From Octopus bimaculoides (taxonomy: Eukaryota): a stretch of DNA of 32,899 nt. Under the pieces are notes generated by a model. That model worked only from the letters and a program-made list of their open reading frames with translations. It had not been told where the DNA came from and searched no databases. The number at the start of each line of letters is the position of its first letter. The stretch's first letter is position 1. The translations under genes were made by a program, and so were the position numbers. The stretch lies in assembly GCF_001194135.2 (NCBI RefSeq), contig NC_068985.1, positions 34,594,314-34,627,212 of the forward strand, read 5' to 3'. Of the stretch, positions 1 to 24,297 are shown in pieces.

Positions 1-386
1 CACCCGTATTGTTAACCAGGTGATACACGAAGGAGTCATACCCAATGACTGGTGTAGCAGCACCATAGTCAACTGCTACAAAGGTAAAGGTGACGCTTTA
101 GATACAAATAATTACAGAGGTATCAAGTTGTTAGATCAGGTAATGAAGGTCACAGAGAGGATCATAGCCCAACTAATTAGGGAGAGAGTCAGTTTAGATG
201 AGATGTAGTTTGGGTTCATGCCAAAGAAAAGCACCACTGATGCTATACTTCTGGTAAGACAGCTGCAGGAGAAATACCTAGCCAAAATAAACCTCTGTAC
301 CTGGCTTTTGTTGACATGGAGAAAGCCTTTGACAGGGTACCCTGATCCCTTAACTGGTGGTCAATGAGGAAACTAGGGATAGAAAA
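1..386 (+). mobile_element. RTE-clade LINE reverse transcriptase fragment (decayed)
   Basis: Reads IPNDWCSSTIVNCYKGKGDALDTNNYRGIKLLDQVMKVTERII, then an in-frame stop, then FGFMP..STTDA and AFVDMEKAFDRV. These are RTE RT N-terminal motifs. Confidence 0.85.
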
Positions 387-1082
387 ATGGCGTCATAGCC
401 CCTATGAAAATTTATATATTTTTGCTGTTGATGAAATTTTAACCATTGAAGTAATATTTCTAAAATTTCATCTTCTCACAAGTTAGAAAGACTCCGTCAT
501 GGGGACTTAACACCCACAGTTTAGTCATTTTATCTAAGCAAAGATTAATACAGTTGTACTCTTGGAAGCTGTAGGGTCACTCGTGCATAAAATATGAGCA
601 TTATTTGTAATTCAATGGTACAACAGTGTAAGAGTTTGCTTTCAGATATACTTAGATTGTGATTTCTGCAATGTGGTGCATAAATTGTCAAATAAATGAG
701 AGGCATCTTTCCATCCACTGATTCAGTTGCAAAATGTTCAGTAAAGTTATTTGGTTGCAGCCTCCTTTGAGTCATTTTATTATCACTAGGTCAGAGATAG
801 TCCCCCGATGGTAACATTGAGTTCAAGGCCTTCCCAGATGAGTGACTGGTTATTGAAATACATTTATATATTGTAAATTTATTCTGTCCAGTTACCTATC
901 GGTATTGTGGTCATTTGCAAACTCCAGAAGTGACACTTTCATTTCCCCTTAGCCCTCACATTACACAGTTGTTAATGTTTCATATACTGGGTGCTTAGGA
1001 CACAAGCATTGTACGCAGCCATCTTTACATTGTTTACATTATTTATATTTGACGGATATTTATCCTCATCTTGTTTGATGTT

Positions 1083-1128
1083 AACACAATGTTTCGGCTG
1101 ATATACCCTCCAGCCTTCTTCAGGTTTC
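1083..1128 (-). ncRNA. Minimal type I hammerhead ribozyme motif (degenerate)
   Basis: Reverse complement reads GAAAC-CUGAAGA-A-GGCUG(gaggguauau)CAGCC-GAAAC-AUU-GUGUU: core boxes, 5-bp stem II, partial stem I. C.A mismatch in stem III. Confidence 0.6.
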
Positions 1129-1271
1129 TTGGGGAAATTTCAAACCTGGGTTCTCATTCCTAAGGTATTTTTTTAAATGTTATTATTATTACTATTATTA
1201 TTAAAGCCACTGCCTGGAATCAAATTTGGAATTTTGGGGTTAGTAGCCCGCGCTCTTAACCACTATACCAT

Positions 1272-1340
1272 ATGGTGTAGTGGTTAAGAGCGCGGGCTAC
1301 TGACCCCAAGATTCTGATTTCGATTCCAGGCAGTGACCTG
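1272..1340 (+). promoter_or_regulatory. tRNA-derived internal Pol III promoter (A box and B box); mirror copy on - strand at about 1205-1271
   Basis: A-box-like TGGTGTAGTGG at 1273-1283, anticodon-arm-like GGG-CTACTGA-CCC, B-box-like ATTTCGATTCC at 1317-1327. The 5' acceptor strand is missing. Confidence 0.6.
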
Positions 1341-1408
1341 AATAATAATAATAATAACATAAAAAAATATACCTTAGGAATGAGAACACAGGTTCAAAAT
1401 TTTCTTAA

Positions 1409-1454
1409 GCCACCTGATGAAGGCTGGAGGGTATATCAGCCGAAACATTGTGTT
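1409..1454 (+). ncRNA. Minimal type I hammerhead ribozyme motif (degenerate)
   Basis: GCCAC-CUGAUGA(1414-1420)-A-GGCUG(gaggguauau)CAGCC-GAAAC-AUU-GUGUU. Stem I CAC/GUG. C.A mismatch in stem III. Confidence 0.65.
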
Positions 1455-1769
1455 AACAACAAACAAGATGAGGACAAATATCTGTCAAATATAAATAATG
1501 TAAATAATGTACATAATTCCTCATCTCTTAAATATAGAACTGTACAGCCATCTTTGTTTTCACTGTCAACTTTGGGTTTGTCCACACTCTTGAAGTGAGG
1601 TGCGTGAGCATAATGGCTGCCTTCCCAATTCTTTTGTCAATCTTGGCATCAAGAGAGAGGTTGTCAGTAATGGTGGACCCAAGGTAGGTGAATTGAGGAA
1701 CAACTTCAAGTTCGTAGTTATTGATTGTGACGGCTGGTTGTGCTGGTGTGCTTTGTCAAATACCTTCAT

Positions 1770-2960
1770 TGACTATGTGCCCAAGAAACACAAGGGAGGA
1801 TACACCAAAAACACATTTAGCCGGGTTAATCTACACTTTATACAGGGTAAGTCATTGGAAAACAACCTTAAATGATGAGCATGTTCTTCCACTGAAAAAA
1901 CTGGCAATGAGATCATCAATATAAGCATATACGAAATCCAATCCATGAATGACTTTGTCTATGAACCACTGAAATGTGCTGAAAAGCATTTTGGAGGCCG
2001 AATGGTATAGTCAAGAATTCGAAAGAGCCAAAAAGAGTTGTTACTGCTGTCTTTGGAATGTCTTCATAGTAGACAGGGGTCTGGTGATAAGCCTTGATGA
2101 GATTGAGCTTGGAAAATACAGTTCAGCCATGCAGTGAGGAAGCAAAATCTTGAAGGTGAGGAATCAGATACCTATCAGGAACAGTGATAGCATTGAGACA
2201 CCTAAAATCCCCCATAGATTACCAATTGCCAGTTCTTGGGCACCACGTGCAGTGGTGAGGCCCACTGACTAGTGTAAAGGCAGATAATTATGAGCTGCAG
2301 CATGTGATTAAACTCAGCTTTTGCTGCCTTTAACTTTTCTGGAGGCAGATGATGAGGACATGAAAACACTGGAACACCATTTGTTGTGATGAAATGTTCT
2401 GTAGAGTGAGCAGGATTATTCAGTTGGAAATTCAGGCTGGAGAGCTCTGGAAAAGAGTCTGAAATTGATTGGTATTAGTTTTCTGTCGCTGTAATAAAGA
2501 ATACTGGGTTAACCAACGAAATACTTGACTTTTGGCCAAAGATGGCTAGATCTGAATTGTTGTCTAAAATCCACTGTTTGTGCACATTAGCCATGAAAGA
2601 GTAGTGGTGGAGAAAATCTGCACTGAGGATCAAATAAAGCAGGACGGCTATGATGAAAATCCATTTGAAATCATTTCACAGGGCCAAATCCAATGAAAGA
2701 GAGAGTTGGCCATACTTCAGTATAAGTGAGTGGTTCACAACTTGCAAGGTAATCAAAGAAAGAGGGAGTTTTTCTTTGATGAATTTCACTGGCCAAATAC
2801 TCTAGGCAGCACCAGAATCAATTAGAAAAAGTTTGTGCAACAAAAAGTCCTCAACAAAGAATGCACGATTATGCAGGAATGAACTGGGAGCAGTTGTCAT
2901 GCTCAGTGTCCCACTGTAACATTTGCCTGACTCGAGTAAGAACACGGTGGAGTACATTTC
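1770..2960 (-). mobile_element. Ty3/Gypsy LTR retrotransposon pol relic (protease and RT)
   Basis: Minus-strand frames give the protease motif FLIDSGAA*SIWP and RT motifs LNAITVPDRYLIPHLQDF, FSKLNLIKAYHQ, DIPKTAVTTLFG..PFGLQNA. Many stops and frameshifts. Confidence 0.75.
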
Positions 2961-3357
2961 TGACTGGCTGGAGTCTGCCATGGTACAACTGAATTATGCC
3001 ACGAAGATAAAATAGATCCTTCCTGACTTACTACAAATACACTTCCTAACCTCTGTGTACCAAGTTATCATTAAAAGCATTTGTAAATGATATTGTGTTG
3101 TCACTTGACAAACCTCCCTTGTTATTTACCTATGATTCTTGCTCACAACCACTCTACTTGGCCCATTCATCCATAAAATATCTTCAAATCTGTTTCAGCA
3201 AATTTAGATTTGTGTTCTGCAAAATAAAAGAAATCTTATTTTTCAAGTAATATTTGTTTTATATTATGAGTTTTTTAAAATACAAGTGGAATATGATCAA
3301 ACAGACTTGCAGTCATTTGATAATACTTGATTAATTTTGTAATATTTTTTCTTTCAG

Positions 3358-3669
3358 ATGACAATGGGAATCTTTACCCAATTTCTGGAACACCATATGT
3401 CATAAAAGATAAAAAATTCACATTGAAATGTAATGAAGATGGTAGTGGTACTTCAACAACTTGGTATACTGGAAATGGAACAGTTATTGCTAAATACAGT
3501 GGAGCATCCAACCAAAATTATTCTAAATATTTTGGTAGCCGTCAAGAAACTAGTTGCCAAAACAAAAGCTGCACATTGAGTATAACCAATGTCAGTTTAG
3601 ATGAAGATGACATGAGCATTATTTGCAGAAGCAGTTTCCATATAAGCATGTTCAATATAAAAGTAATTG
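3358..3669 (+). CDS. Ig receptor exon A: V-set-like Ig domain
   Basis: Acceptor ttttctttcag, donor G|gtaagt, phase 1-1, 312 nt open. Translation includes FTLKC..TTWY..SCTLSITNV..DED..IIC. Confidence 0.85.
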
Positions 3670-3924
3670 GTAAGTAATTATTTTTGCACAGTTAAGTGTG
3701 TGATTTTATTCTATTATTTTTTATATTTCAGTCATTGGACTGTGGCCATACTGTCCGTCCAATTGAAGGGTTTAGTCAATTGGACGGATCCCAATACTTA
3801 CCTTTTTAGTTTTTCACATTGTACTATGTCCCTTTTTGCAAAATTGCTATGTAACTGGGTGGTAAACAAATCTGCACTGGTTGTAAAATGGTGAGAAACA
3901 AACAAAGACGCACACATAGATATG

Positions 3925-4838: not shown

Positions 4839-5081
4839 GATGGTTTGCTAAGTTAGATCACTCAGTGAGTATTGTGCAATGCCGCCTGATTGTTGATATC
4901 AACAAAAATATAATACTGTTTTATTTTTCATCTAACTAAAATTATATAAACAATATTCATGAAATTGTTGCAATCTCAACCCCCAACTATCCAGCAAAAA
5001 TAGAGCTATATTTTCAAAACACACACACACACACATTCCATTCATTTATCAATATAATTTTTGTCACTTTTCCTATTTCAG

Positions 5082-5402
5082 TTTTACCAAAATCAGTCAC
5101 AATCAAGAATATTTCTAACACAGTTCCTGTGGAAAATCAGAACAAAAGTTATGAATGCCTTATTAAAGACACCAACCCTACATTTTCAGTCTTTTGGTTG
5201 ATTACTATGAAAGATGGAACACCAAAAAATGCTACAAAGTATATTTCAAACAGGCCAAGCAAATCTGGAAAGCTGACCACTTTATCATCAAAACTAACAT
5301 TAACTCTTAATAAGAATTTTCAGAAATTACAGTGTGTTGCATATTTTCCGGGTAAAAATGAATTTGTTAACTATTCAAAGGAACTCGATTTGCATATAAA
5401 AT
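5082..5402 (+). CDS. Ig receptor exon B: C2-set (CD80/nephrin-like) Ig domain
   Basis: Acceptor tttcctatttcag, donor T|gtaagt, phase 1-1, 321 nt open. Reads VLPKSVTI..YEC..TNPTFSVFW..SSKLTLTL..KLQCVA. Confidence 0.85.
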
Positions 5403-8744: not shown

Positions 8745-10403
8745 CTAGCAGTGAGAATGTTCATTTTGAAGGTGTATAAGCTCTTTGGTGGTAAGCTCAG
8801 TACCCTGGTCTTTCACCAGCTCTTCAATATTTTCACTGTCGATATCCAAGCCCATAGTTTTTCCCATAGAGAAAATAACATCAACAATAGCAATTTTCCT
8901 TGACAGAAGCAGTACTTGTAGCTGTTTCAAAGCCCTCAAAGTCTCGTTCTAGTACACAGTCTGGCCATAGTTTCCTCCATGCTGAATTCATGGTTCTGTG
9001 ACTCACTTGGTTCCATGCTTCATCAACAAGATTAACACAATTCAGTATATTGAAATGATTTTTCCAAAATTCTCTGAGAATTAACTGAGTGTCATTAGTG
9101 ACTTGTAAACGCTTTTGAAACAGGGCTTTTGTGTAAAGTTTCTTAAAGTTTGCAATGACCTGTTGGTCCATTAGTTGTATTAGGGGAGTTGTGTTAGGTG
9201 GCAGGTATTTGACCTGAATAAAATCAAACTCTTCAACTAAGTCATCCTCCAAACCTGGAGGGTGAGCAGGAGCATTGTCTAACACGAGAAAGCATTTTAG
9301 TGGCAAGCTTTTTTCTTGCAGATATTTTTTAACACTCGGGGCAAAAAATTAATGAATCCATTCAATAAAAAATTGTCTGGTTACCCAAGCCTTTGTATTA
9401 GCCCACCACATAACAGACAATTTACTCTTCATAACATTGTTTCATTTGAAAACCCTCAGATTATCAGAATGGTAAACAAGCAATGGCTTGACCTTGAAAT
9501 CGCCACTTACATTGCCGCATAGCAAAAGAGTGAGTCTATTTTTCATTGGCTTGTGATTGGCAACGCTTTTACCTCCTTAGGATTATTCATTTCTAAAATA
9601 ATCCTGTTTCATCCCCGTTGAACACCTGTTGGGAGAGATAACCTCCTGCCTTTATCAAGTCACTAAACTCAATCATAAATTTCTCAGCTGCTTCCCTATT
9701 TGAACTCACCACCACTCCATACCTAATTACACTGTGTATTTCACTTCTCTTCTTAAATTTCTCAAACCAGCCACTACTAGCTTTGAATCTAAAAGTATCA
9801 CTTTCAGCACTTGTACCAGGGGTTTGCTTTATTAGATCATTTTAAATTTCTAATGCTTTCTCACAAATAAACACTTTACTGATACTGTCACTTGGTAACT
9901 GTTTCTCATTTATGAAAATAAGCAATAACTTTTTCACTCCTTCAAGTATCTTTGGTCTTTGTTTATTAATAACAGTCACTCCTTTTATCACTTCCTTGTT
10001 TTTTAGAATAGTAGATATTGTTGATTTAGGTATACTGTACTGCACAGCAAGATCTGACACACAAACGCCATTTTCGTGTTTTGCGATGATTTCTTTCTTC
10101 ACTTCAATTATTTTTCTCTCAACTTTTCTTTTTCCTCTACCAGCTAGCTTTGGAGCCAGACTAAGGTTTAATGAAGGGAAAAAAAGGCACAGTACAATAG
10201 AATTGGAAAAGAAAAGCACAGCACAAAGCATGAATGTATACAATACAGCAGTCAACTCAGAAATGATTCCGTTCAGGTTAACTCAGTTCAGTTTGGTTTG
10301 GCAATGTTGTTCGAGAACCAAAATTTTGTTTGATAACTGAGGCATTTTCATCTCAAAATTTTCTGTTTGACATGTGAGATGTTTGAGAACTGAGGTTCCT
10401 CTG
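8745..10403 (-). mobile_element. Tigger/pogo DNA transposon (TIGD1-like transposase, frameshifted)
   Basis: ORF 9842-10255 has a CENP-B-type HTH (KKEIIAKHENG..SDLAVQYSIPKSTISTILKNK). ORF 8881-9306 has the DDE_1 region (LVLDNAPAHP..LPPNTTPLIQLMDQQVIANFK). The 5' end on - reads TA|CAGAGGAACCTCAG at 10405-10390. Other TIR not found. Confidence 0.85.
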
Positions 10404-10797: not shown

Positions 10798-11055
10798 ATC
10801 CTCCAGAAAGAGATAACATGATATTAAATGTTTTTGGAGGAAAAGTATGCATTGATACCCCAGCCAAATTTCAGTGCAGTTGGGAAGGTGGTAATCCACC
10901 AGCAAGTGTAACCCTGATGTATAAAGATATATCATACACTACTAAAGAAAATGTTGAACTTAATGTTGAACCTTCTGAATCTCATCAAACAGTCAAGTGT
11001 CTGGGGACTCATATTGTTGCAAATGTATCTTGTGAAAAGAATTTAACTTTTTATT
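10798..11055 (+). CDS. Ig receptor exon C: Ig domain with two extra cysteines
   Basis: Acceptor ttcatag, donor T|gtgagt, phase 1-1, 258 nt. Reads YPP..VCIDTPAKFQCSWEGGNPPASVTL..VKCLGTHIVANVSC. Confidence 0.85.
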
Positions 11056-12080: not shown

Positions 12081-12373
12081 ACCCCTGAAAAATTGATGAG
12101 TGTTTCATTTCCTATATGGTCAAGCTCAAATTACCCCAAGATTATGGATTTGTGGTGGTTTACATTCCTAATTGTGTATTGCTATGATATTCTGAATGAG
12201 AAAACATGTTCAATAACAAACTTAGAATCTGAAAGATTTACAAAATACTTTCATATATTGCTATAACTATGTTCCTTTAAAATTTATTTTTGAAATGTTT
12301 ATGGAACTGAAGTTTTGTACTAATTTTTATTGAATTTTCTGAATTGAAACTGTGTTTTCTGATTTTTTTGAAG

Positions 12374-12622
12374 ATCCTCCTCAAATAAACATGCATATTT
12401 TAGAAGAAAAAAATGCTACAGTAATTAATTGCACTCTATTTGATATGAATCCAGCAACTAATAAATACATACTGAAGCAAAAATGGGGAAATACTACCAA
12501 GAATACTTATGATACAAATGTATTTATAAAAAATCCTTCTTTTAATAATGCTGGTACATGGGAGTGTCATATAAGCAATGAAAATTTTTGTATGAGTAAA
12601 CCATTAAACTACAAAATTCCAG
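12374..12622 (+). CDS. Ig receptor exon D: Ig domain ending at a non-canonical GC donor
   Basis: Acceptor ttttttgaag, phase 1-1, 249 nt. Reads YPPQI..VINC..NAGTWECHISN. Ends CAG|GCAAGT, and no in-phase GT donor was seen at the domain end. Confidence 0.75.
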
Positions 12623-12733
12623 GCAAGTATTTTACAAAGCCACAATTTATTTTTAAAAAACATTTACGAGTTAATTGTTATTTTTAGAAGGTAAAATTGT
12701 TCAGTTATTTAATAAATTTCATCCCATTAGAAG

Positions 12734-14596
12734 GGTGTTAGGACAGTATTTCGTTGTAGGACAGTTATTTCATTGTTGGTTAATTTGTTCCTAGTCAATT
12801 CGTCATTTATCAATTCATCCCCAGGTCAATTTGTTGCTGGCCAATTCATCCCAAAATACTCTTAAACACTCTTAAATGTGATTTTCAAGGGAAAGTTTAG
12901 AACAATCACTTTAGAATCAAAATTGTTGTTGGACAGTTTTAGATATTTTTTCCTTTCTTTACACCCCACCTCTCTTTTAAGTATTTGCACTGAACAGTTT
13001 ATGAAAAAAGATTTTCAACCAAACCGAATTAAATTTATTCCCTACGCCTACCCATCAACATGACTATCTCCAAGATCATAACTTCAAAGTGGTCAATCAA
13101 TAAAATTATATATATACAAAAAATAAGCAGAATGCAGATGGATTGAAGATATATTGGAGGTGCAAAAATTGTGTGTGAAAGGTGAAACTTAAGAAGATTG
13201 GGATCTATAATCACACTTCAGCTGCTGCAGAGGTAAATGCAAGGATAATAGTTTCAAATATTAAAGTAAAGTTTATTTCATCTTGTGGTGCCCATCGCTC
13301 AGTTATCGCTAGTGGAGTTCAGAATTTAAACAACTGTACATTGTCACAAACACCTCTGTTTGCACAGCTTAATAGGAATATTAGACGTTGGAAGCAAGCT
13401 GATTCCAACTACCCTGCCACCTCACTTACAAATGTTGGGTTTTCCATTCCAAGTGAATACTCCTACCTTCACAATGAAACGCTTTTACAGTATGACAGTG
13501 GAATGGAAAATTCAAAATGCATACTAATATTTGCAAGTGACAAAGCATTTCAAAAGTTAAAACAACATAAGAGCTGGGCAGCAGATGGAACATTTAAGTG
13601 CTGCTCTCGTATATTTTTTCAGTTATGCATACTTCACATTCAAATTGATAATTTTAATGCCCCACAATTGTGTGCATTGCTCTCTGACAAAAGTCAAGAC
13701 ACATATAGTAGACTTTTTGCTAAAATAAATGAATTACTGCAGAATGAGGGACCTAACAATATGATTATGGATTTTGAAAAAGCAGCCCATAACAGACTTC
13801 TGGAATCGCTTCCTGGGTCGAATTTGGTATTCTGCTTGTTTCATTTAGGACAAAATGTGTACAAGCATGTCATGCAAGAAGGACCTAAATGCAGATATCA
13901 TGAAGGTGGTAGTTTTAGTCTAAAAATGCGGTGTTTTGTTGTCCTTGCCTTCCTGACAGTTGATGTTGTAGTAGATGGATATGAACAACTTGTAGATGAT
14001 GATGATATTCCACAGTCACTTGTATCCTATTTTGAAAATAATTTTATAGGACCACCTGGAGGAAGAGGACAGAAGGGATAATGCTTTGAACCTCCATTTT
14101 CATTGCCTATATGAAATGTTTGGGATCTATGTATGACAGGGATTGCTCATACTACAAATAGTTTAGAAGCCTACCACAACATGCTGAAAAACATAGTGAA
14201 TATTAGTCATCCAAATATTTGGAAACTTATTGATGTGATTAAATATGAGGAAAGGTTTGCTAGTACTAAACTGCAGAAGTTCATGCAAGGAGAAGAACCA
14301 AGCCAAAAGAAATAATACAGAGATTTGAATCTGTGTATAAAAAATGTCATGGAAAAATATGATTCAAGCCCCAAAATTATTTTTCTACAAATAATTCCAC
14401 ACAATCTTAAATTTTTAAGAAAAAATAACTATGTAATACAGCAGACCTTAAAATAAGCATTTTAAAATTTAGATATTCATTCTTCCATTTTTCCTATGAT
14501 CTCAATGGATTAACTGACAACAAATTGACCTAGGGGCAAACTGACCAACTATAAATTAAACCATAACAAATTGCCATTGACGAATTGACAGACACC
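12734..14596 (+). mobile_element. Mutator/MULE DNA transposon, near full length, transposase disrupted
   Basis: ORF 13182-14081 has the MULE domain (WAADGTF..MDFEKA..CLFHLGQ), continued by 14133-14315 (TTNSLEAYHN). FLYWCH-like YWRC lies upstream. Termini GGTG..CACC with related gtcaatt/ccaggtcaatttgttg subterminal repeats. ATTAGAAG flanks at 12726-12733 and 14597-14604. Confidence 0.8.
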
Positions 14597-16465
14597 ATTA
14601 GAAGAGTGTTGGATTTTGTTTCTTTTTATGTATATCAATAAAATTGATAATTTTTAACTATAACCTTCAGGAAAGGTTTAATATGTAAATACTTAAGAAT
14701 TGTAGTTTTAATAAATTCATTTCATCAAATTTTCTCCAAAAGAACTGAAACTGTTTACAAGTAAATTTTAAGCATTCATATTATATATTGAAGTAGTTGC
14801 CTTGTTGAGTTTTCTTATTATTTAGTTTGTTCCATTTTAACTGTCTATTGTATGCCAAAACAAAGAATATATAGCAAATTAATTTACCAGGCAAGAACAA
14901 CAAATATTTCTTGTTACAGTATTACAAATTATAAAGATATACAATTTTGGCTACTAAATTATTTATTTTTTAAATGTTACAATAGACCTTTCCAAAAACT
15001 TACCTAAAACTTTTAGTAGCATGGAGTTTTCATTTAAATTCTATATCATGTTATATTTGTTAGCTTCAGAAAGAAAAGAAATATCTATATCATGTTTATA
15101 TCTTTATGAATGACACTGTAACATAAAAGTGATGGTTTCTAGAATGTCTACCACTTCAGATGCTTTGTGGTATTATCACTATATTGACTGTTTCTGAGTA
15201 GTATTGGAGAGATTGTTTTTATTGGAGGTGGCACATATTTTGATTTAAGTGAACTTTGAAAAGAGAAAATTCAAAACTTGTAGCGAATTTGTCAATTTGC
15301 AAGAACTATTTCAGGTGATATCTATGACAATATCAGATAATAAAAATTGCTTCCTAAATTATGATAAATCTCAAAATCTCTAAAGTGAGATATAATACAA
15401 TATAAATATAAATATAATTCCAGCTTCTTTGAAAATATTTCTTTTTATGTTACATATTGGACTCTTATCTCTGATCAAATATATGAAACTAATCAACAAG
15501 TAAAATTACCTTTTAAATAACATTTGAGACTATTAACCTGACTTGCTAATTTAAGTGATCAAGGCCTGTTTTATACTTAAAAGCGATAATGGTAACATCT
15601 TAAGTAATGAGTAGAATTGAAAAGTAACTGATTGAATGTCTGTTATGTATAGGAAGTTAAACTGGATATGATATAGGTAGCTAGTATGACAGATTTGACT
15701 GCTGTATGCATATGTCCATATTATTGGGTTAGTTAAAAAGTGGTGAATAAGACTCTTTGACAAAGTTGCCAGATGTCTAATAAGTAAGAGTTTGTGTTAC
15801 TAGAATTGAGAGTGATAAAAACTTATATTGTGTAAAGGTGTATTTTACTCTATTATTGATTTTCATATTGAAGTCTCATATGTATGAATTTCTTTCAGGT
15901 GATGTATTATTGTTTGTATTATAGTAGAACAGATTGCTGTAAAGCATTCACTGGTAGATAATGTACATGGTTTAGTGGTGTGTAAAATTGAGAGGGTCTT
16001 TCACAAGAATCCAAATTGTGTTTGGCATTTGACAGGTTATTCAGATATTTTACATACTTACTACAACAGATTGTTAAAATAAAATTTAGAGTAATGCAGG
16101 TAGTTGGGTGACTTGATCAGGTGGAATGTGATAAGACAATGTTAGAGGATCCTCTGGGACCATACACTGTAAAATATACTATGGTTGCTGTGTAGAGTTT
16201 GTATTTAAATAGGATGGTAAGCAAGAGTTAGTTTGAGTTCTAGGGATTCTAATTTGAAGGTGAAATGGTACAGATACTTAGAATTGTCAATATTTTAGCC
16301 CTAAATACTAGCTGAATCAGTCTGGAAGTAAATTTCTGTCATCAGATTGTTTGGTTTACATTTTATTATTTTCATTTATATTTTGAAAATTTAGAAATCT
16401 TCTATTCCAAATTTACATAATATATTATTTTCTCTTTCACTATTTTTTTTATTTTTTCCCACTAG

Positions 16466-16758
16466 TGAGACCTATTCTCAGTTCAATAGCAAGTGATCCT
16501 AAAAAGAGAAGTGTTTCAAATGGAGAATCTGTAATTTTGAAACAGTGTTTTTATTCTCATCCAAAATCTGATGTAAAATGGCAAAAGAATGAGGAATTAA
16601 TTGACTCAAACAAATATTTAACAAGTGGTTTTGTATCAAGTGAGTTTCCTTTCAAAAGAAGCTGTACTAGTTTAAAGATAATGATTTTGGTACTTATACC
16701 TTAACAGTGGAAAACTCCAAAGGAAAAGAAATAATTACTTTTGCCTTGAGATCTAAAG
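16466..16758 (+). CDS. Ig receptor exon E: I-set-like Ig domain with a frameshift near 16677-16680 (possible pseudo-exon or assembly error)
   Basis: Acceptor ttttttcccactag, donor G|gtaaat, 293 nt (not 3n). Frame 1 reads VRP..LKQCFYSHPKSDVKWQK..SCTSLKI and stops at 16702-16704. The -1 frame carries DNDFGTYTLTVENSKGKEIITFALRSK up to the donor. Confidence 0.75.
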
Positions 16759-19711: not shown

Positions 19712-19816
19712 AAGTAACAGAAATTCCTTTGAAAACAATTATTGGTTGCACTGTAGGAATTGTATTATTATTAATAATTTTGGGGCTTCTTGCTTATAAA
19801 TGCTACAAAATAAGAG
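19712..19816 (+). CDS. Ig receptor transmembrane exon
   Basis: Acceptor atcttttcag, phase 1. Reads EVTEIPLKT-IIGCTVGIVLLLIILGLLAY-KCYKIR, a 20-aa hydrophobic helix followed by basic residues. Donor G|gttggt (alternative gtatgt at 19821). Confidence 0.8.
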
Positions 19817-19926
19817 GTTGGTATGTTTCACACATTATTAAGATTTGTTAATTACATTGAGATATCTATTCTTAAAACTCTTCTACCTGACTGGACATGG
19901 TTAAATAGATGTTGGAATTTGTGTTT

Positions 19927-20075
19927 ATGTATGTATGTATGTATGTGTGTATGTATGTATGTATGTATGTATGTATGTATGTATGTATTATGTATTATGT
20001 ATGTATGTATGTATGTATGTATGTATGTATGTGTGTGTGTTGTGTGTGTCTGTATTGTGTGTGTGTGTGTGTGTG
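19927..20075. repeat. (TATG)n / (TG)n microsatellite
   Basis: Directly visible. Confidence 0.95.
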
Positions 20076-20144
20076 AATCTATGTATTTAGTGTTGACTGT
20101 TGGAAGTATCATAGTAGGGATTGAATATACTTCTATTTTAATCA

Positions 20145-20220
20145 AGTCAGTTTCTTACTACTCTGGAGTTTTGCCGCTGAATACACATGGGTGAAATTCT
20201 AGAGTAGCAAGAAACTGACT
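20145..20220. repeat. Hairpin with 27-bp inverted arms and a 22-nt loop
   Basis: agtcagtttcttactactctggagttt versus aaattctagagtagcaagaaactgact; 3 mismatches. Confidence 0.8.
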
Positions 20221-20861
20221 GAAGTAATATACACATATAAACATACATACACACTTCATCAGTACAACATCTATACACACACACATACACACACACACAC
20301 TCACATACACATACACACACACATACAGACACACATATGTATGTGTGTGTGTATATATATATATATATATAAATATAGGATAGTGGTACAACAATGCTCC
20401 AATATTTACTGGAAATAGCAGTTGATAATATAAGACGCTATAGTAAAGCTTTACTGTGTGTATATGTATATATATATATATATATAAAATACAAAATGGG
20501 ACAAGAATGCAAAACATCCAGACAGTTAGGTGATACAAAAAAGGGACAACAAAACATCCAGAAAGACGATACAAAGAAAACAAGGACGGGTCATTCAGAT
20601 TTTTCTTTCCTCAGTCAAGTTCCAGATTATCTTTGCAATTTCGGCTGGTTATATTCGAGATTGCTCCAATCTGGCCAGCTCCAAGGAAAAACTAAGCTAA
20701 GAGCATTAGATTCCTTGGAAGAAAGCAGTGAATGTATACGAAAACAAGGATGGAAAAAAAACTCAGAGAATGTTACACAGATACAAGTACAAATAACAGG
20801 ACATAACAATAGATGTCTTTCGACTAAGGACAAATGAAATTAAGCTGGTGTGTGTGGAAGT

Positions 20862-20962
20862 AAAGCCTTATGGCAGGTTGTCCAAGGTGCCGTGCAGTAG
20901 GACTGAACCCAGAACCATGTGGTTTGTAAGCAAGCTACTTACAACACAACCATTCCTATGCC
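20862..20962 (-). mobile_element. tRNA-derived SINE 5' head
   Basis: Reverse complement reads aggcataggaatggttgtgttgtaagtagcttgc...ggttctgggttcagtcc..ggcaccttgg, with A/B-box-like motifs. Same family as 22059-22171. Confidence 0.7.
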
Positions 20963-20965
20963 TAT

Positions 20966-21010
<45 letters not shown>

Positions 21011-21025
21011 ATATATATATATGTG

Positions 21026-21072
<47 letters not shown>

Positions 21073-21162
21073 TAGCAAAAATGTTTGCAGGCAGTGAACA
21101 TAAAAAAATTTCATCTTACCTGTAGGAAGAACATTAAATAAATGTACAACCCAGATGTGGAT

Positions 21163-21238
21163 AATCTAAGACCTAGGTTCTGAACTTCCCAAATCACATT
21201 TGTTAACGTAAATTTTATTAGTTCTCATCAGCTAGATT
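21163..21238 (-). ncRNA. Type I hammerhead motif, family 2 (degenerate)
   Basis: Reverse complement reads AAUCUAG-CUGAUGA-GAACU..AGUUC-AGAAC-CUAG-GUC-UUAGAUU. The GAAAC box is mutated. Confidence 0.6.
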
Positions 21239-21438
21239 CACCTAGACAAAAATTTTCAACTGTCACTACTTTAATCTGATGGTGCTTTGTTTTACTGGGA
21301 AGCAATACTACTGTATTGCCTTATTTAATGATTTTTTCTTTGAAAACTTTTTCACTGTTCTCAGTTTTTTAATGTCTAGGTGTTCAGACAAGTAAATACT
21401 GGCATTGATGTAGGAACTGTTGAAATTTTCACTAGGTG

Positions 21439-21514
21439 AATCTAGCCAATGAGAACTAATCAAATTTATGTTAACAAACGTAATTTGAAAAGTTCAAAAC
21501 CTAGGTCCTAGATT
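21439..21514 (+). ncRNA. Type I hammerhead motif, family 2 (degenerate)
   Basis: AAUCUAG-CCAAUGA-GAACU..AGUUC-AAAAC-CUAG-GUC-CUAGAUU. Perfect 7-bp stem I, but both core boxes are mutated. Confidence 0.55.
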
Positions 21515-21603
21515 ATCCACATCTGGGTTGTACATTTATTTAATATTCTTCCTATAGGTAGGATGGAATTTTTCAAGTTCACTGCTTGCAAACATTTTTG
21601 TCA

Positions 21604-21641
<38 letters not shown>

Positions 21642-21794
21642 GAAAGCTTTACTATAGTGTCATATATTATCGACTGCTATTTCTAGTAAATATTGGTGCG
21701 TTATTGTACCACTACCCTATGTTAATGCTTTAACCTGATGGTGCTTTATTTTACTGGGAAGCAATACTACTGTATTGCACTACTCAATAATTTT

Positions 21795-22018
21795 ATTTAC
21801 TCTTTTACTCTTTTACTTGTTTCAGTCATTTGACTGTGGCCTTGCTGGAGCACTGCCTTTAGTCAAGCAAATCGACCCCAGGACTTAATCCTTGTAAGCC
21901 TAGTACTTATTCTATTGGTCCCTTTTGCTGAACCATTAAGTCACGGGGACGTAAACACACCAGCATCGGTTTTCAAGTGATGTTGGGGGAACAAACACAG
22001 ACACAAACATATATACAT

Positions 22019-22051
<33 letters not shown>

Positions 22052-22171
22052 CATATATACGACGCGCTTCTTTCAGTTTCTGTCTACCAAATCTACTCAC
22101 AAGTCTTTGGTCAGCCTGAGGCTATAGAAAACACTTGCCCAAGGTGCCATGCAGTGGGACTGAACCCGGAA
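21795..22171 (-). mobile_element. tRNA-derived SINE (head truncated by the gap), internal (CA/TA)n, (AAAAGAGT)n-like tail
   Basis: Head and core at 22059-22171 (ggcaccttgggcaagtg on -), body at 21815-21995, tail tttactcttttactc. Confidence 0.75.
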
Positions 22172-22181
22172 NNNNNNNNNN
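22172..22181. other. Assembly gap (10 N)
   Basis: Run of n between a SINE head and a (TA)/(TG) microsatellite. Confidence 1.
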
Positions 22182-22268
<87 letters not shown>

Positions 22269-22284
22269 CATACACATACATATA

Positions 22285-22515
22285 TATTCCTTTATTCCTT
22301 TATTCTTTTATTCTTTTATTTGTTTCAGTCATTTGACTGTGGCCATGCTGGAGCACCACCTTTTAGTTGAAGAAACCAACCCCAGGAATTATTCTTAGTA
22401 AGGCTGGTACTTATTCTATCGGTCTCTTTTGTTGACCAATGAGGACGTAAACACTCCAACATCGGTTGTCATGTAATGATGGGGTGGGGGAAACACACTC
22501 ACAAAGACACGCACA
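22285..22515 (-). mobile_element. Second copy of the same SINE 3' half
   Basis: tttgtttcagtcatttgactgtggccatgctggagcacc... is colinear with 21815-21995. Confidence 0.75.
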
Positions 22516-22523
22516 TAAATATA

Positions 22524-22620
22524 TACAGTAATCCCTCAACTATCCAAAACCCCACACAAAAGGTGAAAATCCGCAAAGTAGAAGCAGTACTGTATTGTAT
22601 ATTTTTTGTTATTATTATAA
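22524..22620. mobile_element. Tigger-like terminal fragment
   Basis: TA|CAGTAATCCCTC, a pogo/Tigger-type terminus. No partner end found. Confidence 0.4.
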
Positions 22621-22709
22621 TTTGTATATATGCATTTTATTATAAATCCAAAACAACACCACAGAGGAATCGACATAAGCTTAAATAATAAAGTGTGATA
22701 GGTGAACAG

Positions 22710-24297
22710 TGGATATGGCGAAGGATTGAGGCTCTGGTTTTGGTTCCCACAATGAGGGGGAACTAGGCTGCTGGAGTTCTGCATTGCAAATGACCTTATG
22801 GTTTGCAATACTAACTTCAGGAAACCTGCCAGTCACCTAGTCACCTACCGTTCTGGCAAACACACTAACCAAATTGACTACATCCTTGCCAGAAAAAGGG
22901 AAAGATGACTGCTTATAAATGCCAAATCCTTCCCAGGCAAAGAATGTACCCCACAACATAGACTGGTAGTTAATGACTTCAGGATCAGAGCTAAGTAGTT
23001 GCCCAGAAGATGACTAGCATGGAGGAGAAGGGTCTGGAAGCTTAAAGATCCTGCGAATGGACAGAGATTTAGAGACATATTACTCGAAGCCTTTGATGAA
23101 ATAGAAGGGGATATAGCCAGGGGAGAAGCAGAAAGAAGGAAGTTTTTCAATGTTCTATGTCATGAAGATCAGAGGCATGAAATGTTGCGGATTGCTAGAC
23201 AATGTGTCAGAGAAAACCATGATGTGGTAAGAAAGAAATCTATTTGCATGGATGATGGCTCACTTGCAGTTAGTAATTCTGCAAAGAAGGAGGCTTGAAA
23301 GTGTCATTATGAAAGGCTGCTAAATGTAGAGAATGCATGGGAGAAGGAGAGCTTGCTTAATGTTGACACAACAATCAAAGGTGATGTCCTAGTCAAATAA
23401 TCACAGAGGTATCAAATTACTGGACCAAGTGATGAAAGTTACTGAAAGGGTCATAGCTCAAATTAATTAGGAGGAAAGTTAGCATAGCTGAAATGCAGTT
23501 CAGGTTTATTTGGATTTGTGCCTATGCAGTCTTTATGGTGAGGCAACTGTAGGAGAAATACTTGGCCAAGAATAAACCTCTGTTTCTGGCTTTTAGTGAC
23601 ATGGAGAAAGCCTTTAACAGAGTCCCCCATTCCTTTATATGATGGGCAATATGGAAGTTAGGGATAATGAGTGGTTAGTGAGAGCTGTAGAAGACATGTA
23701 CAGTGATGCCGTTAGTAAGGTGAGAGTCACCAATGAGTATAGCAATGAATTAAGTGTACAAGTCGGAGTCCACCAGGAGTTGGTTTTTAGCACCCTATCA
23801 TTTATCATGGTCCTCCAAACTACAACTGCTGAATTTAAGACTGGCTGCCCCAGGGAGCTCCTCTATGCTGATGACCTTGTTCTCATTGATGAATCACTAC
23901 CCCAAAAAATTTTCAAGTATGAAAGAAAAGTCTAGAATCAAAGGGCCTTAGAGTTAACATAGCAAAGACCAAAGTATTGATAAGTAGGAAAATAGACAAA
24001 TTACAGGTGCCTTCAGGGAGATGGCTCTGCTTGATATGTAGACAAAGAGTCTGGAAAAACTCCATAAAGTGTACCCAGTGCAAGCTATGGTCACATAACA
24101 GGTGCAGCTATCACTGGACAACTACCAATGAAAGTAGTCTTTATATGTGGCATATATAAAAATTGGACTCCCTCATATGCCTGTGGGGATCCCTAGAAGT
24201 AGTAGACAATTTCTGTTACGTAATAGTGGGGTAGGACGGTTTGTTCTGCAAGCATAGCTGCTAGAACAAGAATAGGCTGGGAAAAATACAGAGAGAT
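22710..24297 (+). mobile_element. RTE LINE: endonuclease C-terminus through RT, internally deleted
   Basis: Reads EFCIANDLMVCNTNFRKP..LVTYRSG..QIDYIL, later EFKTGCPRELLYADDLVL (about 23830-23885), the Cys-rich CLIC..C..C segment and VVDNFCY. Confidence 0.85.

What the first reader, a model, noticed from the sequence alone, without database searches (positions are those of the whole stretch)
1016..1555. Exactly delimited 518-bp palindromic insertion with an 11-bp target-site duplication
Seen: 1027-1271 is the reverse complement of 1272-1511, and the right arm runs 33 nt further to 1544. CAGCCATCTTT flanks both sides. Removing the insert and one repeat restores the host RTE frame (TVKTKMA-AYNACVLST). 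Established: Penelope-like elements often insert as an inverted, truncated terminal repeat joined to a forward copy. Inference: this is a complete single insertion of a non-coding element mobilised in trans, with both junctions readable.
Basis: partly seen in the sequence, partly recalled or inferred. Interest (0 to 1): 0.7.

Follow-up and report, generated by a model that had tools for sequence, protein, structure and literature searches.

The report
Inverted-dimer hammerhead SINE insertion, Penelope-style
A short non-coding jumping element in an octopus genome was inserted once as a head-to-head double copy. Its anatomy matches the known insertion style of Penelope-like retrotransposons, so it is a tidy example of a known process rather than a new kind of system.

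Summary
A 518-bp near-palindrome (1027-1544) is flanked by an exact 11-bp duplication, CAGCCATCTTT. Removing the insert and one repeat restores a LINE reverse-transcriptase reading frame.

The window is Octopus bimaculoides, and the insert lies in an intron of an Ig-like gene.

The repeated unit is a roughly 286-nt non-coding SINE-like element with these features:
- a 5' head with tRNA-type box A and box B;
- a minimal type-I hammerhead core of the Penelope type: CUGAUGA, a bulged A, a 6-bp helix II starting G-C, then GAAA;
- two alternative 3' ends 33-34 nt apart.

Two O. sinensis copies of the unit are monomers. Both start at least 13 nt further 5' than the palindrome centre. Both stop exactly where the inverted arm stops, with no tail. 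About half of the translated relatives carry the 33-nt tail.

Related copies inferred from ORFs also occur as head-to-head dimers (12 of 144) and as partial tandems (18 of 144).

Head-to-head inversion, a 30-40-bp tail at one end, a short TSD and a minimal hammerhead together are the published Penelope-like element (PLE) signature.

Two caveats remain: no autonomous partner was identified, and the inverted form is occasional rather than the rule. This is a new member of a known kind, of moderate interest.

The parts
1016..1026 (.). Left copy of the 11-bp target-site duplication, CAGCCATCTTT
   Evidence: Exact direct repeat and the only two occurrences in the window (0.02 expected by chance).
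1027..1271 (-). Inverted arm: antisense copy of the unit. It runs from 'site b' (outer end, no tail) to the shared 5'-truncation point at the centre.
   Evidence: 89% identical to the reverse complement of 1272-1510. Its outer end coincides with the 3' end of the independent monomer copies in L006.
1092..1123 (-). Hammerhead-like core in the inverted arm: CTGAAGA-A-GGCTGG...TCAGCC-GAAA
   Evidence: Descriptor hit; sequence.
1272..1544 (+). Forward arm: sense copy of the unit from the same 5'-truncation point to 'site a' (full 3' end, with tail)
   Evidence: Its 3' end agrees with O. bimaculoides protein P0001 (...SSSLKYRTI, then stop).
1273..1327 (+). tRNA-like head with box A (TGGTGTAGTGG, 1273-1283) and box B (ATTTCGATTCC, 1317-1327), 33 nt apart. 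It lacks the first 13 or more nt seen in monomer copies.
   Evidence: Pattern scan: 9 hits in 308 kb against 1.05 in shuffles. Relaxed ARAGORN finds a cloverleaf only on the 4-copy consensus. Rfam tRNA gives no hit.
1414..1445 (+). Minimal type-I hammerhead core: CUGAUGA, bulged A, 6-bp helix II starting G10.1-C11.1, then GAAA. It is followed by ACAU, probably decayed from ACGU.
   Evidence: Descriptor: 4 hits in 147 kb against 0.015 in shuffles. Features match the PLE min-HHR description (PMC4209133). Copy 2 keeps GAAACG, and relatives encode K-R-C = AAACGNUG.
1511..1544 (+). The 'tail': a 33-34-nt 3' extension present only on the forward arm
   Evidence: It is absent from L006 copies 2 and 3. 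It is present in roughly half of family-A relatives and most family-B modules. It matches the 30-40-bp PLE tail.
1545..1555 (.). Right copy of the 11-bp target-site duplication
975..1760 (-). Host: degenerate LINE reverse-transcriptase C-terminal fragment interrupted by the insertion (context, not part of the element)
   Evidence: Frame restored on removal. Homologues carry RVT_1. Colinear alignment with L001 and L002.

Best explanation
This is one retrotransposition event of a short non-autonomous element. The element has a tRNA-like pol III head, a minimal hammerhead motif and a 3' module with two alternative ends. The integration machinery of a Penelope-like element (PLE) inserted it into an old LINE fragment in an intron of an Octopus bimaculoides Ig-like gene.

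Proposed mechanism:
1. The target was nicked on both strands, 11 bp apart.
2. The bottom-strand 3'-OH primed reverse transcription at the very 3' end of the element RNA ('site a', giving the arm with the tail).
3. The top-strand 3'-OH primed at the internal start 33-34 nt upstream ('site b', giving the arm without the tail).
4. Both cDNAs ran towards the 5' end and were joined head-to-head. The join may use a 2-nt TA microhomology. It lies at least 13 nt short of the full-length 5' end.
5. Fill-in of the 11-bp stagger produced the TSD.

Shown directly: the anatomy, the TSD, the restored empty site, monomer copies elsewhere, the family-wide dual 3' termini, the hammerhead core, and recurrent head-to-head and tandem forms among relatives.

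Inferred: that a PLE enzyme did the work, that both strands primed, and that the arms were joined by microhomology.

If the arms were identical at birth, their 11% divergence (JC 0.118) puts the event very roughly 16 million years ago.
For: - Exact palindrome and TSD; empty site restored and colinear with related LINEs.
- Species and intronic position.
- Monomer copies in O. sinensis L006, plus the orthologue of one of them in O. vulgaris L007. They extend at least 13 nt further 5' than the palindrome centre and end at ...AAATAATGTA, the same point as the outer end of the inverted arm. A random stop would land at that point (within a base or two) only about 1% of the time.
- Dual 3' termini 33 nt apart in relatives: family A has about 8-11 copies with the tail and 8-12 without; family B has about 82 modules with it and 13 without.
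- The hammerhead core descriptor is far above the shuffle expectation (4 hits against 0.015). It also hits a genuine PLE 3' end in L004, about 265 nt after a GIY-YIG-type ORF end. The hammerhead-to-element-end distance there is about 90 nt, against 87 nt in this unit.
- 12 of 144 ORF-inferred relatives are antisense-then-sense and none are sense-then-antisense; 18 are tandem.
- Literature: PLE protein nicks and extends both strands and starts reverse transcription at two internal sites whose spacing equals the tail (PMC11167929). Inverted pLTR plus a 31-bp tail plus 8-10-bp TSDs are described in rotifer Penelope, along with trans-mobilisation by pLTR sequences (PMC3846280). Min-HHR features are described, and pairs of min-HHRs on opposite strands 100-700 bp apart are reported (PMC4209133).
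Against: - No autonomous PLE sharing the 3' module was found. The one PLE 3' end available aligns weakly (z 2.6 and 1.7).
- A profile of the open frame found only short ORFs and no long RT/EN protein.
- The hammerhead is incomplete in this copy. Position 16.2 reads A rather than G, and helix I is only 3 bp, or 3+4 bp with a bulge.
- Rfam hammerhead models gave no hit at E<=10.
- A helix II covariation test was not significant.
- Only two other distinct DNA copies could be examined (a third is an orthologue of one of them), and their TSDs are unreadable.
- The species of most ORF-inferred relatives is unknown.
- The sequence alone cannot separate dual priming from self-priming.
Confidence: 0.65

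Rival explanations
1. Single-strand TPRT followed by self-priming (snap-back). One cDNA primed at site a reached the 5' region, folded back on itself and copied itself back towards the tail. It was then ligated to the upstream target end.
For: The centre is a perfect palindrome and both arms are truncated at the same nucleotide. Arkhipova et al. infer self-priming from palindromes at the inverted junctions of Penelope insertions (PMC3846280). Some ORF-inferred dimers have unequal arms, as if there were a loop.
Against: The copy-back would have had to stop exactly at site b, the terminus used independently by the monomer copies and by many relatives. A hairpin with no loop is not physically possible, although the central TA/ATAT could hide a short loop. 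In vitro, the PLE protein extends both strands.
Confidence: 0.2
2. An ordinary LINE-dependent tRNA SINE (partner of L2/CR1/RTE type) inserted with twin priming. The hammerhead-like motif is a coincidence or a relic.
For: tRNA-like head with A and B boxes. The 11-bp TSD is typical of TPRT. Both termini end in TGTA, reminiscent of the short terminal repeats of L2-type tails (own knowledge). Octopus genomes are rich in LINE-dependent SINEs.
Against: Classical twin priming joins non-overlapping parts of the RNA, not two full copies (own knowledge). Two discrete termini 33 nt apart, partial tandems of the 3' module and recurrent head-to-head dimers are PLE traits. The hammerhead core carries the PLE-specific bulged nucleotide, and this descriptor is expected only 0.015 times by chance in the sequence scanned. 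There are no terminal simple repeats or A-tail.
Confidence: 0.08
3. A monomer was inserted first, and its 5' part was later duplicated in inverted orientation by a replication or repair error (fold-back at a break).
For: Palindromic duplications can arise at breaks. The arm divergence cannot tell simultaneous from slightly later formation.
Against: The inverted arm sits exactly between the left TSD copy and the unit, with no host DNA duplicated. Its outer end is the family's site b. Differences between the arms are spread evenly over both.
Confidence: 0.03
4. Two independent insertions of the same SINE in opposite orientation, or a foldback/MITE DNA transposon whose arms are long TIRs with an 11-bp TSD.
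For: Inverted arms with a TSD superficially resemble a foldback element. MULE-type transposons make 9-11-bp TSDs (own knowledge), and a MULE ORF lies in the window.
Against: One arm-length unit exists alone elsewhere, with its own defined ends. The arms are asymmetric by 33-34 nt. There is no separate TSD for either arm. Both arms are truncated at the same base. No second copy of the whole palindrome was found in about 400 kb of octopus DNA.
Confidence: 0.03

Closest known systems
Penelope-like element insertions with an inverted pLTR and a 'tail' (e.g. Pen2a_Av of Adineta vaga; D. virilis Penelope; Poseidon of Anolis)
   Same: Head-to-head inverted 5'-truncated copy next to a forward copy. 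A 30-40-bp extension at one end only (31 bp in Pen2a_Av, 33-34 here). A short TSD (8-10 bp there, 11 here). A minimal type-I hammerhead about 90 nt from the 3' end. A palindrome at the inverted junction.
   Different: No RT/GIY-YIG ORF at all. The unit is about 286 nt with a tRNA-like pol III head instead of a pLTR-ORF-pLTR body. No sequence-matched autonomous PLE was found.
Animal non-LTR retrozymes (hammerhead-bearing tandem repeats, proposed PLE non-autonomous derivatives)
   Same: Short, non-coding, carrying a type-I hammerhead and presumed PLE-dependent. Translated relatives of this element form tandem arrays of a 129-nt hammerhead-plus-tail module.
   Different: This copy is an inverted dimer, not a tandem. 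It is dispersed with a TSD and has a tRNA-like head. The hammerhead is the minimal PLE type rather than the canonical type with loop-loop contacts. Circular RNA was not tested.
Sm-alpha / Sj-alpha SINE-like retroposons of schistosomes (recalled from own knowledge; Ferbeyre 1998 is cited in PMC4209133)
   Same: Short dispersed SINE-like repeats that carry a hammerhead ribozyme, in a genome rich in PLEs.
   Different: Different phylum and sequence. Those carry canonical hammerheads. The comparison rests on memory and was not tested here.
tRNA-derived SINEs of octopus (OK, OR1, OR2; Ohshima and Okada 1994, listed in PMC4758252) and other octopus SINEs seen in L003 and L006
   Same: tRNA-type box A and box B head, length of 250-300 nt, dispersed in introns.
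   Different: Beyond generic tRNA motifs there is no sequence similarity to the abundant SINE in L003/L006. This family adds a hammerhead core and dual 3' termini. Identity with OK/OR1/OR2 could not be checked because no sequences were held.
L1 twin-priming inversions (own knowledge: Ostertag and Kazazian 2001)
   Same: Both target strands prime reverse transcription, giving an inverted 5' part, a direct 3' part and one TSD.
   Different: In L1 the two segments come from different parts of one RNA. Here both arms cover the same sequence, and the second primer sits at a fixed internal start site.

Membership tests
PLE-type insertion architecture | Inverted 5'-truncated copy immediately adjacent to the 5' end of a forward copy (head-to-head) | tested here: met
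   Arms abut with 0 nt between them. Both are truncated at least 13 nt short of the 5' end seen in the monomers.
PLE-type insertion architecture | Optional 30-40-bp 'tail' at one end, reflecting two RT start sites | tested here: met
   A 33-34-nt extension on the forward arm only. Both termini recur in independent copies and in relatives.
PLE-type insertion architecture | Short TSD flanking the whole composite insert | tested here: met
   11-bp exact TSD; 8-10 bp in rotifer Penelope.
PLE-type insertion architecture | [quoted passage not shown] | tested here: inconclusive
   The core, the bulge, the G-C pair and a 6-bp helix II are present in both arms. Positions 15.2-16.2 read CA, not CG, in this copy. 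CG is kept in L006 copy 2 and implied in relatives. Helix I is weak. There is no Rfam hit. Cleavage was not testable.
Autonomous Penelope-like element | ORF with a telomerase-like RT and a GIY-YIG endonuclease | tested here: not met
   No such ORF in the insert. A GIY-YIG regex found nothing in the loci held at that point — the window and L001-L004. A profile search found only short ORFs.
Non-autonomous partner relationship (SINE/LINE-style shared 3' end, here with a PLE) | The 3' module shares sequence with an autonomous element in the same genome | tested here: inconclusive
   Only one PLE 3' end was available (L004). It has the same layout but weak similarity (z 2.6). A whole-genome search was not possible.
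tRNA-derived SINE | Internal pol III promoter: box A and box B at tRNA-like spacing at the 5' end | tested here: met
   TGGTGTAGTGG, then 33 nt, then ATTTCGATTCC. The pattern is enriched about 9-fold over shuffles.
tRNA-derived SINE | Recognisable tRNA cloverleaf or homology in the head | tested here: inconclusive
   ARAGORN finds nothing at default settings. At a relaxed threshold it finds a cloverleaf only on the 4-copy consensus. Rfam tRNA gives no hit.
tRNA-derived SINE | Discrete short unit with a defined 5' end, occurring dispersed | tested here: met
   Two independent monomers in L006 have unrelated upstream flanks and begin near CCCACGGGCTTATGG. This rests on only two copies.
Non-LTR retrozyme | Head-to-tail tandem repeats, each with a type-I hammerhead | tested here: not met
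   This locus is inverted, not tandem. Tandem 129-nt modules occur only in translated relatives.
Foldback / MITE DNA transposon | TIRs bounding an element that transposes as a whole, with a fixed TSD length | tested here: not met
   The arm unit exists alone. The arms are asymmetric. No second copy of the palindrome was found in about 400 kb.

The most novel reading that the evidence does not exclude
The locus is a natural fossil of dual-strand target-primed reverse transcription, with each arm starting at one of the two RT initiation sites that were defined in vitro for a lizard PLE. The element would belong to a large, so far unnamed class of invertebrate SINEs: a tRNA-type promoter joined to a PLE hammerhead-and-tail module, depending on Penelope-like elements rather than LINEs. 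Such a class could account for part of the 'unclassified SINE' fraction of octopus genomes (about 250 Mb in O. vulgaris).
Probability: 0.3. Interest if true: 0.65.

Novelty: new member of a known kind. Interest (0 to 1): 0.4.

Why it matters
It is still unresolved how Penelope-like elements make their odd inverted and tandem structures and the 30-40-bp tail. The only mechanistic data are in vitro, from one lizard element.

This locus is a simple case with both junctions, an intact TSD and a reconstructable empty site. One arm begins at each of the two alternative 3' termini that the family also uses in monomers. That pattern is what dual-strand priming predicts, and it gives a concrete, countable test for a genome-wide census.

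It also suggests that some octopus repeats labelled 'SINE' may depend on PLEs rather than LINEs. PLEs make up 6.8% of the O. vulgaris genome. This matters for repeat annotation in cephalopods.

If the intron is transcribed, the insert forms a hairpin with a stem of about 240 bp. This has no demonstrated function.

Tried and rejected
No read-level copy-number, polymorphism or empty-allele test was possible.
- Exact 20-mer scans of metagenome, prokaryote-genome and viral collections for the hammerhead hairpin found nothing.
- Full-text search for element sequence strings found no paper. The supplement of the O. vulgaris repeat paper holds no sequences.
- Contig look-ups that failed: P0001 and a window ORF are not on record, nor is P0096. 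P0098 and P0102 span too long a range to return DNA.
- LINE homologues from ENA assemblies (L001, L002) are from distant species. They share nothing with the window except the LINE itself. They were useful only for the empty-site alignment.
- The orthologous site in O. sinensis or O. vulgaris was not captured. L005-L007 are paralogous Ig-gene loci.
- Type-III hammerhead idea: I considered pairing the head (GUA|GUGGUUAAG) with the core across a 117-nt loop. I dropped it because the stem-I partner is not conserved in the other arm, and the type-I reading with a decayed CpG fits the relatives.
- Truncated-PLE idea: the open 55-codon frame might have been the N-terminus of a PLE ORF, making the unit a truncated PLE. 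No long protein matched, and the monomers have a defined 5' end, so I rejected this in favour of a discrete non-autonomous element.
- Helix II covariation from W/R...Q/R residue pairs was not significant.
- No TSDs of 6 nt or more were found for L006 copies 2 and 3.
- Rfam at permissive thresholds returned only generic miRNA-hairpin matches caused by the palindrome.

Full report
**Observation.**
- The region reads as described. The repeat finder reports inverted arms that meet with no spacer (1186-1271 / 1272-1357) and continue outwards (1026-1196 / 1341-1511). It also reports the 11-nt direct repeat CAGCCATCTTT at 1016-1026 and 1545-1555.
- A global alignment of the forward arm with the reverse complement of the other arm gives 213 matches, 26 mismatches and one 6-nt indel in an (AAT)n run.
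- Because of the indel, 1027 pairs with 1510. One base (1026/1511) is ambiguous, so the extra piece on the forward arm is 33-34 nt.
- The 11-mer occurs only at these two places in the window, against 0.02 expected.
- The 518 nt fold into a single hairpin (-341 kcal/mol, z = -45).
- Joining the flanks with one repeat restores ...KLTVKTKMAAYNACVLST... on the minus strand. The joined DNA aligns straight across the junction with two related LINE copies fetched from other assemblies.
The RTE label for the host was not tested.

**Where it is.**
- A translated frame of the unit hit one 51-aa Octopus bimaculoides protein.
- Five Ig-like exons on the + strand (3330-3668, 5081-5401, 10800-11054, 12367-12627, 16465-16701) match the O. 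bimaculoides protein A0A0L8GVD7 over residues 104-571. Three exons match at 100% and the other two at 93-95%. Residues 1-103 are encoded upstream of the window.
- The window is therefore O. bimaculoides, and the insert lies in an intron, with the forward arm in the gene's orientation.

**What the unit is.** The forward arm has three notable features.
- *A tRNA-type head.* It starts with TGGTGTAGTGG and, 33 nt later, ATTTCGATTCC, matching tRNA box A and box B. That combined pattern gives 9 hits in 308 kb of octopus DNA against 1.05 in shuffles. The other hits are this family and other octopus SINEs. ARAGORN and Rfam do not call a tRNA. A relaxed ARAGORN run folds only the four-copy consensus into a cloverleaf. 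I therefore call the head tRNA-like, not proven tRNA-derived.
- *A hammerhead core.* At 1414-1445, and mirrored at 1123-1092, lies CUGAUGA-A-GGCUGG-(8 nt)-UCAGCC-GAAA. A descriptor for this core finds 4 hits in 147 kb against 0.015 in shuffles. Cervera and de la Pena list four recurrent traits of the minimal hammerheads of metazoan PLEs. [quoted passage not shown] The fourth, a palindromic 15.2-16.2, is missing. This copy reads ACAU where ACGU is expected. An O. sinensis copy keeps GAAACG, and translated relatives encode K-R-C, that is AAACGNUG. A CpG decay is therefore likely. Helix I is short, and activity cannot be judged.
- *A 3' layout like a real PLE.* One other descriptor hit, L004 39900 (-), lies about 265 nt after the end of a GIY-YIG-type ORF (...LRIKEALLIHRLGPRINNRLEIGNQYII*) and about 90 nt before the element ends in a (TA)n tract. 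In the present unit the same distance is 87 nt. Sequence similarity between the two 3' regions is weak (z 2.6).

**Other copies.**
- None occurs in the window or in 114 kb of paralogous O. bimaculoides DNA.
- An O. sinensis locus (L006) holds two copies, both monomers. One is full-bodied (11241-10995). The other lacks unit positions 61-155 (53573-53416) and is shared at the orthologous site with O. vulgaris.
- Both monomers extend at least 13 nt further 5' (...CCCACGGGCTTATGGCATAGTGG), and their upstream flanks are unrelated. The family is therefore a discrete short element, and both arms of the palindrome are truncated at the same nucleotide.
- Both monomers end at ...AAATAATGTA and lack the tail. 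That is the same point as the outer end of the inverted arm.
- No TSDs could be read on these old copies.

**Relatives seen as translated ORFs.** A profile of the open frame was searched against 1.84 billion representative proteins. It gave 146 hits, two of them spurious. All the rest are short ORFs on ENA or Logan contigs of unnamed species, and none is a long RT protein.
- They fall into an octopus-like group and two further groups that share the hammerhead-plus-tail module.
- In the octopus-like group about 8-11 carry the tail (...HNSSSLKYRT, then flank) and about 8-12 stop before it (...NVNN, then flank).
- In the largest group about 82 modules carry an 11-aa (33-nt) tail and about 13 stop just before it.
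- Twelve ORFs contain an antisense-translated segment followed by a sense one, with varying inversion points, and none has the reverse order. Eighteen contain tandem sense modules with a 129-nt period.
- These counts come from ORF calls and are biased, but they show that dual termini, head-to-head dimers and partial tandems recur.

**Comparison with what is known.**
- PLE insertions are described as partial tandems, often with an adjacent inverted 5'-truncated copy and a 30-40-bp tail at one end (PMC8557442).
- In the rotifer Adineta vaga one insert has an inverted pLTR, a 31-bp tail and a 9-bp TSD. Other inserts there have 8- and 10-bp TSDs. Palindromes sit at inverted junctions, and pLTR sequences suffice for mobilisation in trans (PMC3846280).
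- In vitro, a lizard PLE protein nicks and extends both DNA strands. It starts reverse transcription at two internal sites whose spacing equals the tail, without homology to the target (PMC11167929).
- Pairs of minimal hammerheads on opposite strands 100-700 bp apart were noted in Schistosoma.
- Animal retrozymes are argued to be non-autonomous PLE derivatives.
- PLEs make up 6.8% of the O. vulgaris genome, and 'unclassified SINEs' about 250 Mb.

**Mechanism.**
- The best reading is a single event by PLE machinery with priming on both strands. The forward arm started at the 3' end (site a) and the inverted arm at the internal start (site b). The two cDNAs were joined head-to-head, and fill-in of an 11-bp stagger made the TSD.
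- The centre CCA-TA-TGG is compatible with a 2-nt TA overlap between two arms that each reach TATGG.
- The main argument for dual priming over snap-back is that the outer end of the inverted arm coincides with a terminus used independently by other copies.
- The differences between the arms (17 transitions, 9 transversions) are spread evenly over both arms, as expected for decay after a common origin.
- JC 0.118 corresponds to roughly 16 My on the scale used for O. vulgaris repeats. This is a rough figure.
- With that much divergence, an intact 11/11 TSD is expected about 28% of the time.

**Limits.**
- The partner element is unidentified and the orthologous empty site was not obtained.
- Only two other distinct DNA copies were seen.

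**Verdict.** This is a new family-level example of a known kind: a non-autonomous, hammerhead-bearing element inserted in the Penelope manner. It adds a tRNA-like head and gives a useful natural illustration of the two RT start sites.

Noticed in passing
window 3330-3668, 5081-5401, 10800-11054, 12367-12627, 16465-16701 (+): Five exons of an Ig-like multidomain gene (O. bimaculoides A0A0L8GVD7, residues 104-571). It belongs to a fast-evolving paralogue cluster on CM046605.1, with relatives in O. sinensis and O. vulgaris at only 46-77% identity.
   Followed up: partly
L004 39780-40300 (-): The 3' end of a genuine Penelope-like element. A GIY-YIG-type ORF end is followed by about 265 nt, then a minimal hammerhead (CTGAAGA-A-GGAAT..ATTCC-GAAATATC), then about 90 nt, ending in a (TA)n microsatellite.
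   Followed up: partly
L004 15174-15279 and 15819-16109: A 52-nt-arm near-palindrome (81%, 2-nt spacer) and 252/342-nt direct repeats lie next to a second hammerhead-like core at 15894 (-). This may be another PLE-type composite.
   Followed up: no
proteins P0108-P0252 (search): A very large family of short ORFs reads MANGIRTGDPRGFNKGRSSKFREGSRVRQTPEEGRRTYRPKRCGNNNKDEDNSPKTLNDKNHQASSQKFRQL, often with tandem 129-nt modules. By back-translation, the GIRTGDP stretch fits a canonical box B (GGTTCGAATCC) better on the opposite strand, so the tRNA-like piece may be antisense to the hammerhead in that family. Species unknown.
   Followed up: partly
window 8881-10255 (-) and 13182-14081 (+): Remnants of a pogo/Tigger-type transposase (DDE_1, CENP-B_N) and a 299-aa MULE transposase ORF.
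   Followed up: no
window 1-390 and 23377-24155: An RT-bearing repeat at the window start (TRIVNQVIHEGVIPNDW...GKGDALDTNNYRGIKLL...) recurs many times at 70-95% identity in every octopus locus fetched. It is an abundant, fairly young LINE family shared by three Octopus species.
   Followed up: no
window ~1760-2700 (-): An LTR-retrotransposon-type RT fragment (...IPKTAVTTLFGSFEFLTIPFGLQNA...YIDDLI...FLGHIVNEGI) directly abuts the host LINE fragment, so the insertion sits in a nest of older elements.
   Followed up: no
L006 10356-11241: The O. sinensis monomer copy 2 lies immediately beside, and slightly overlaps in the alignment, the region homologous to the window's first Ig exon (window 3087-3727). 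This is a different insertion site in a paralogous gene.
   Followed up: no
window 19800-22700, with an N run at 22172-22181: Long (TG/CA)n and (TA)n-rich microsatellite tracts and a 10-N assembly gap.
   Followed up: no
L001 gene calls: All 18 called genes in L001 end in TAA or TAG and never TGA, as if the caller used a code in which TGA is not a stop. This is a gene-calling quirk on eukaryotic DNA.
   Followed up: no
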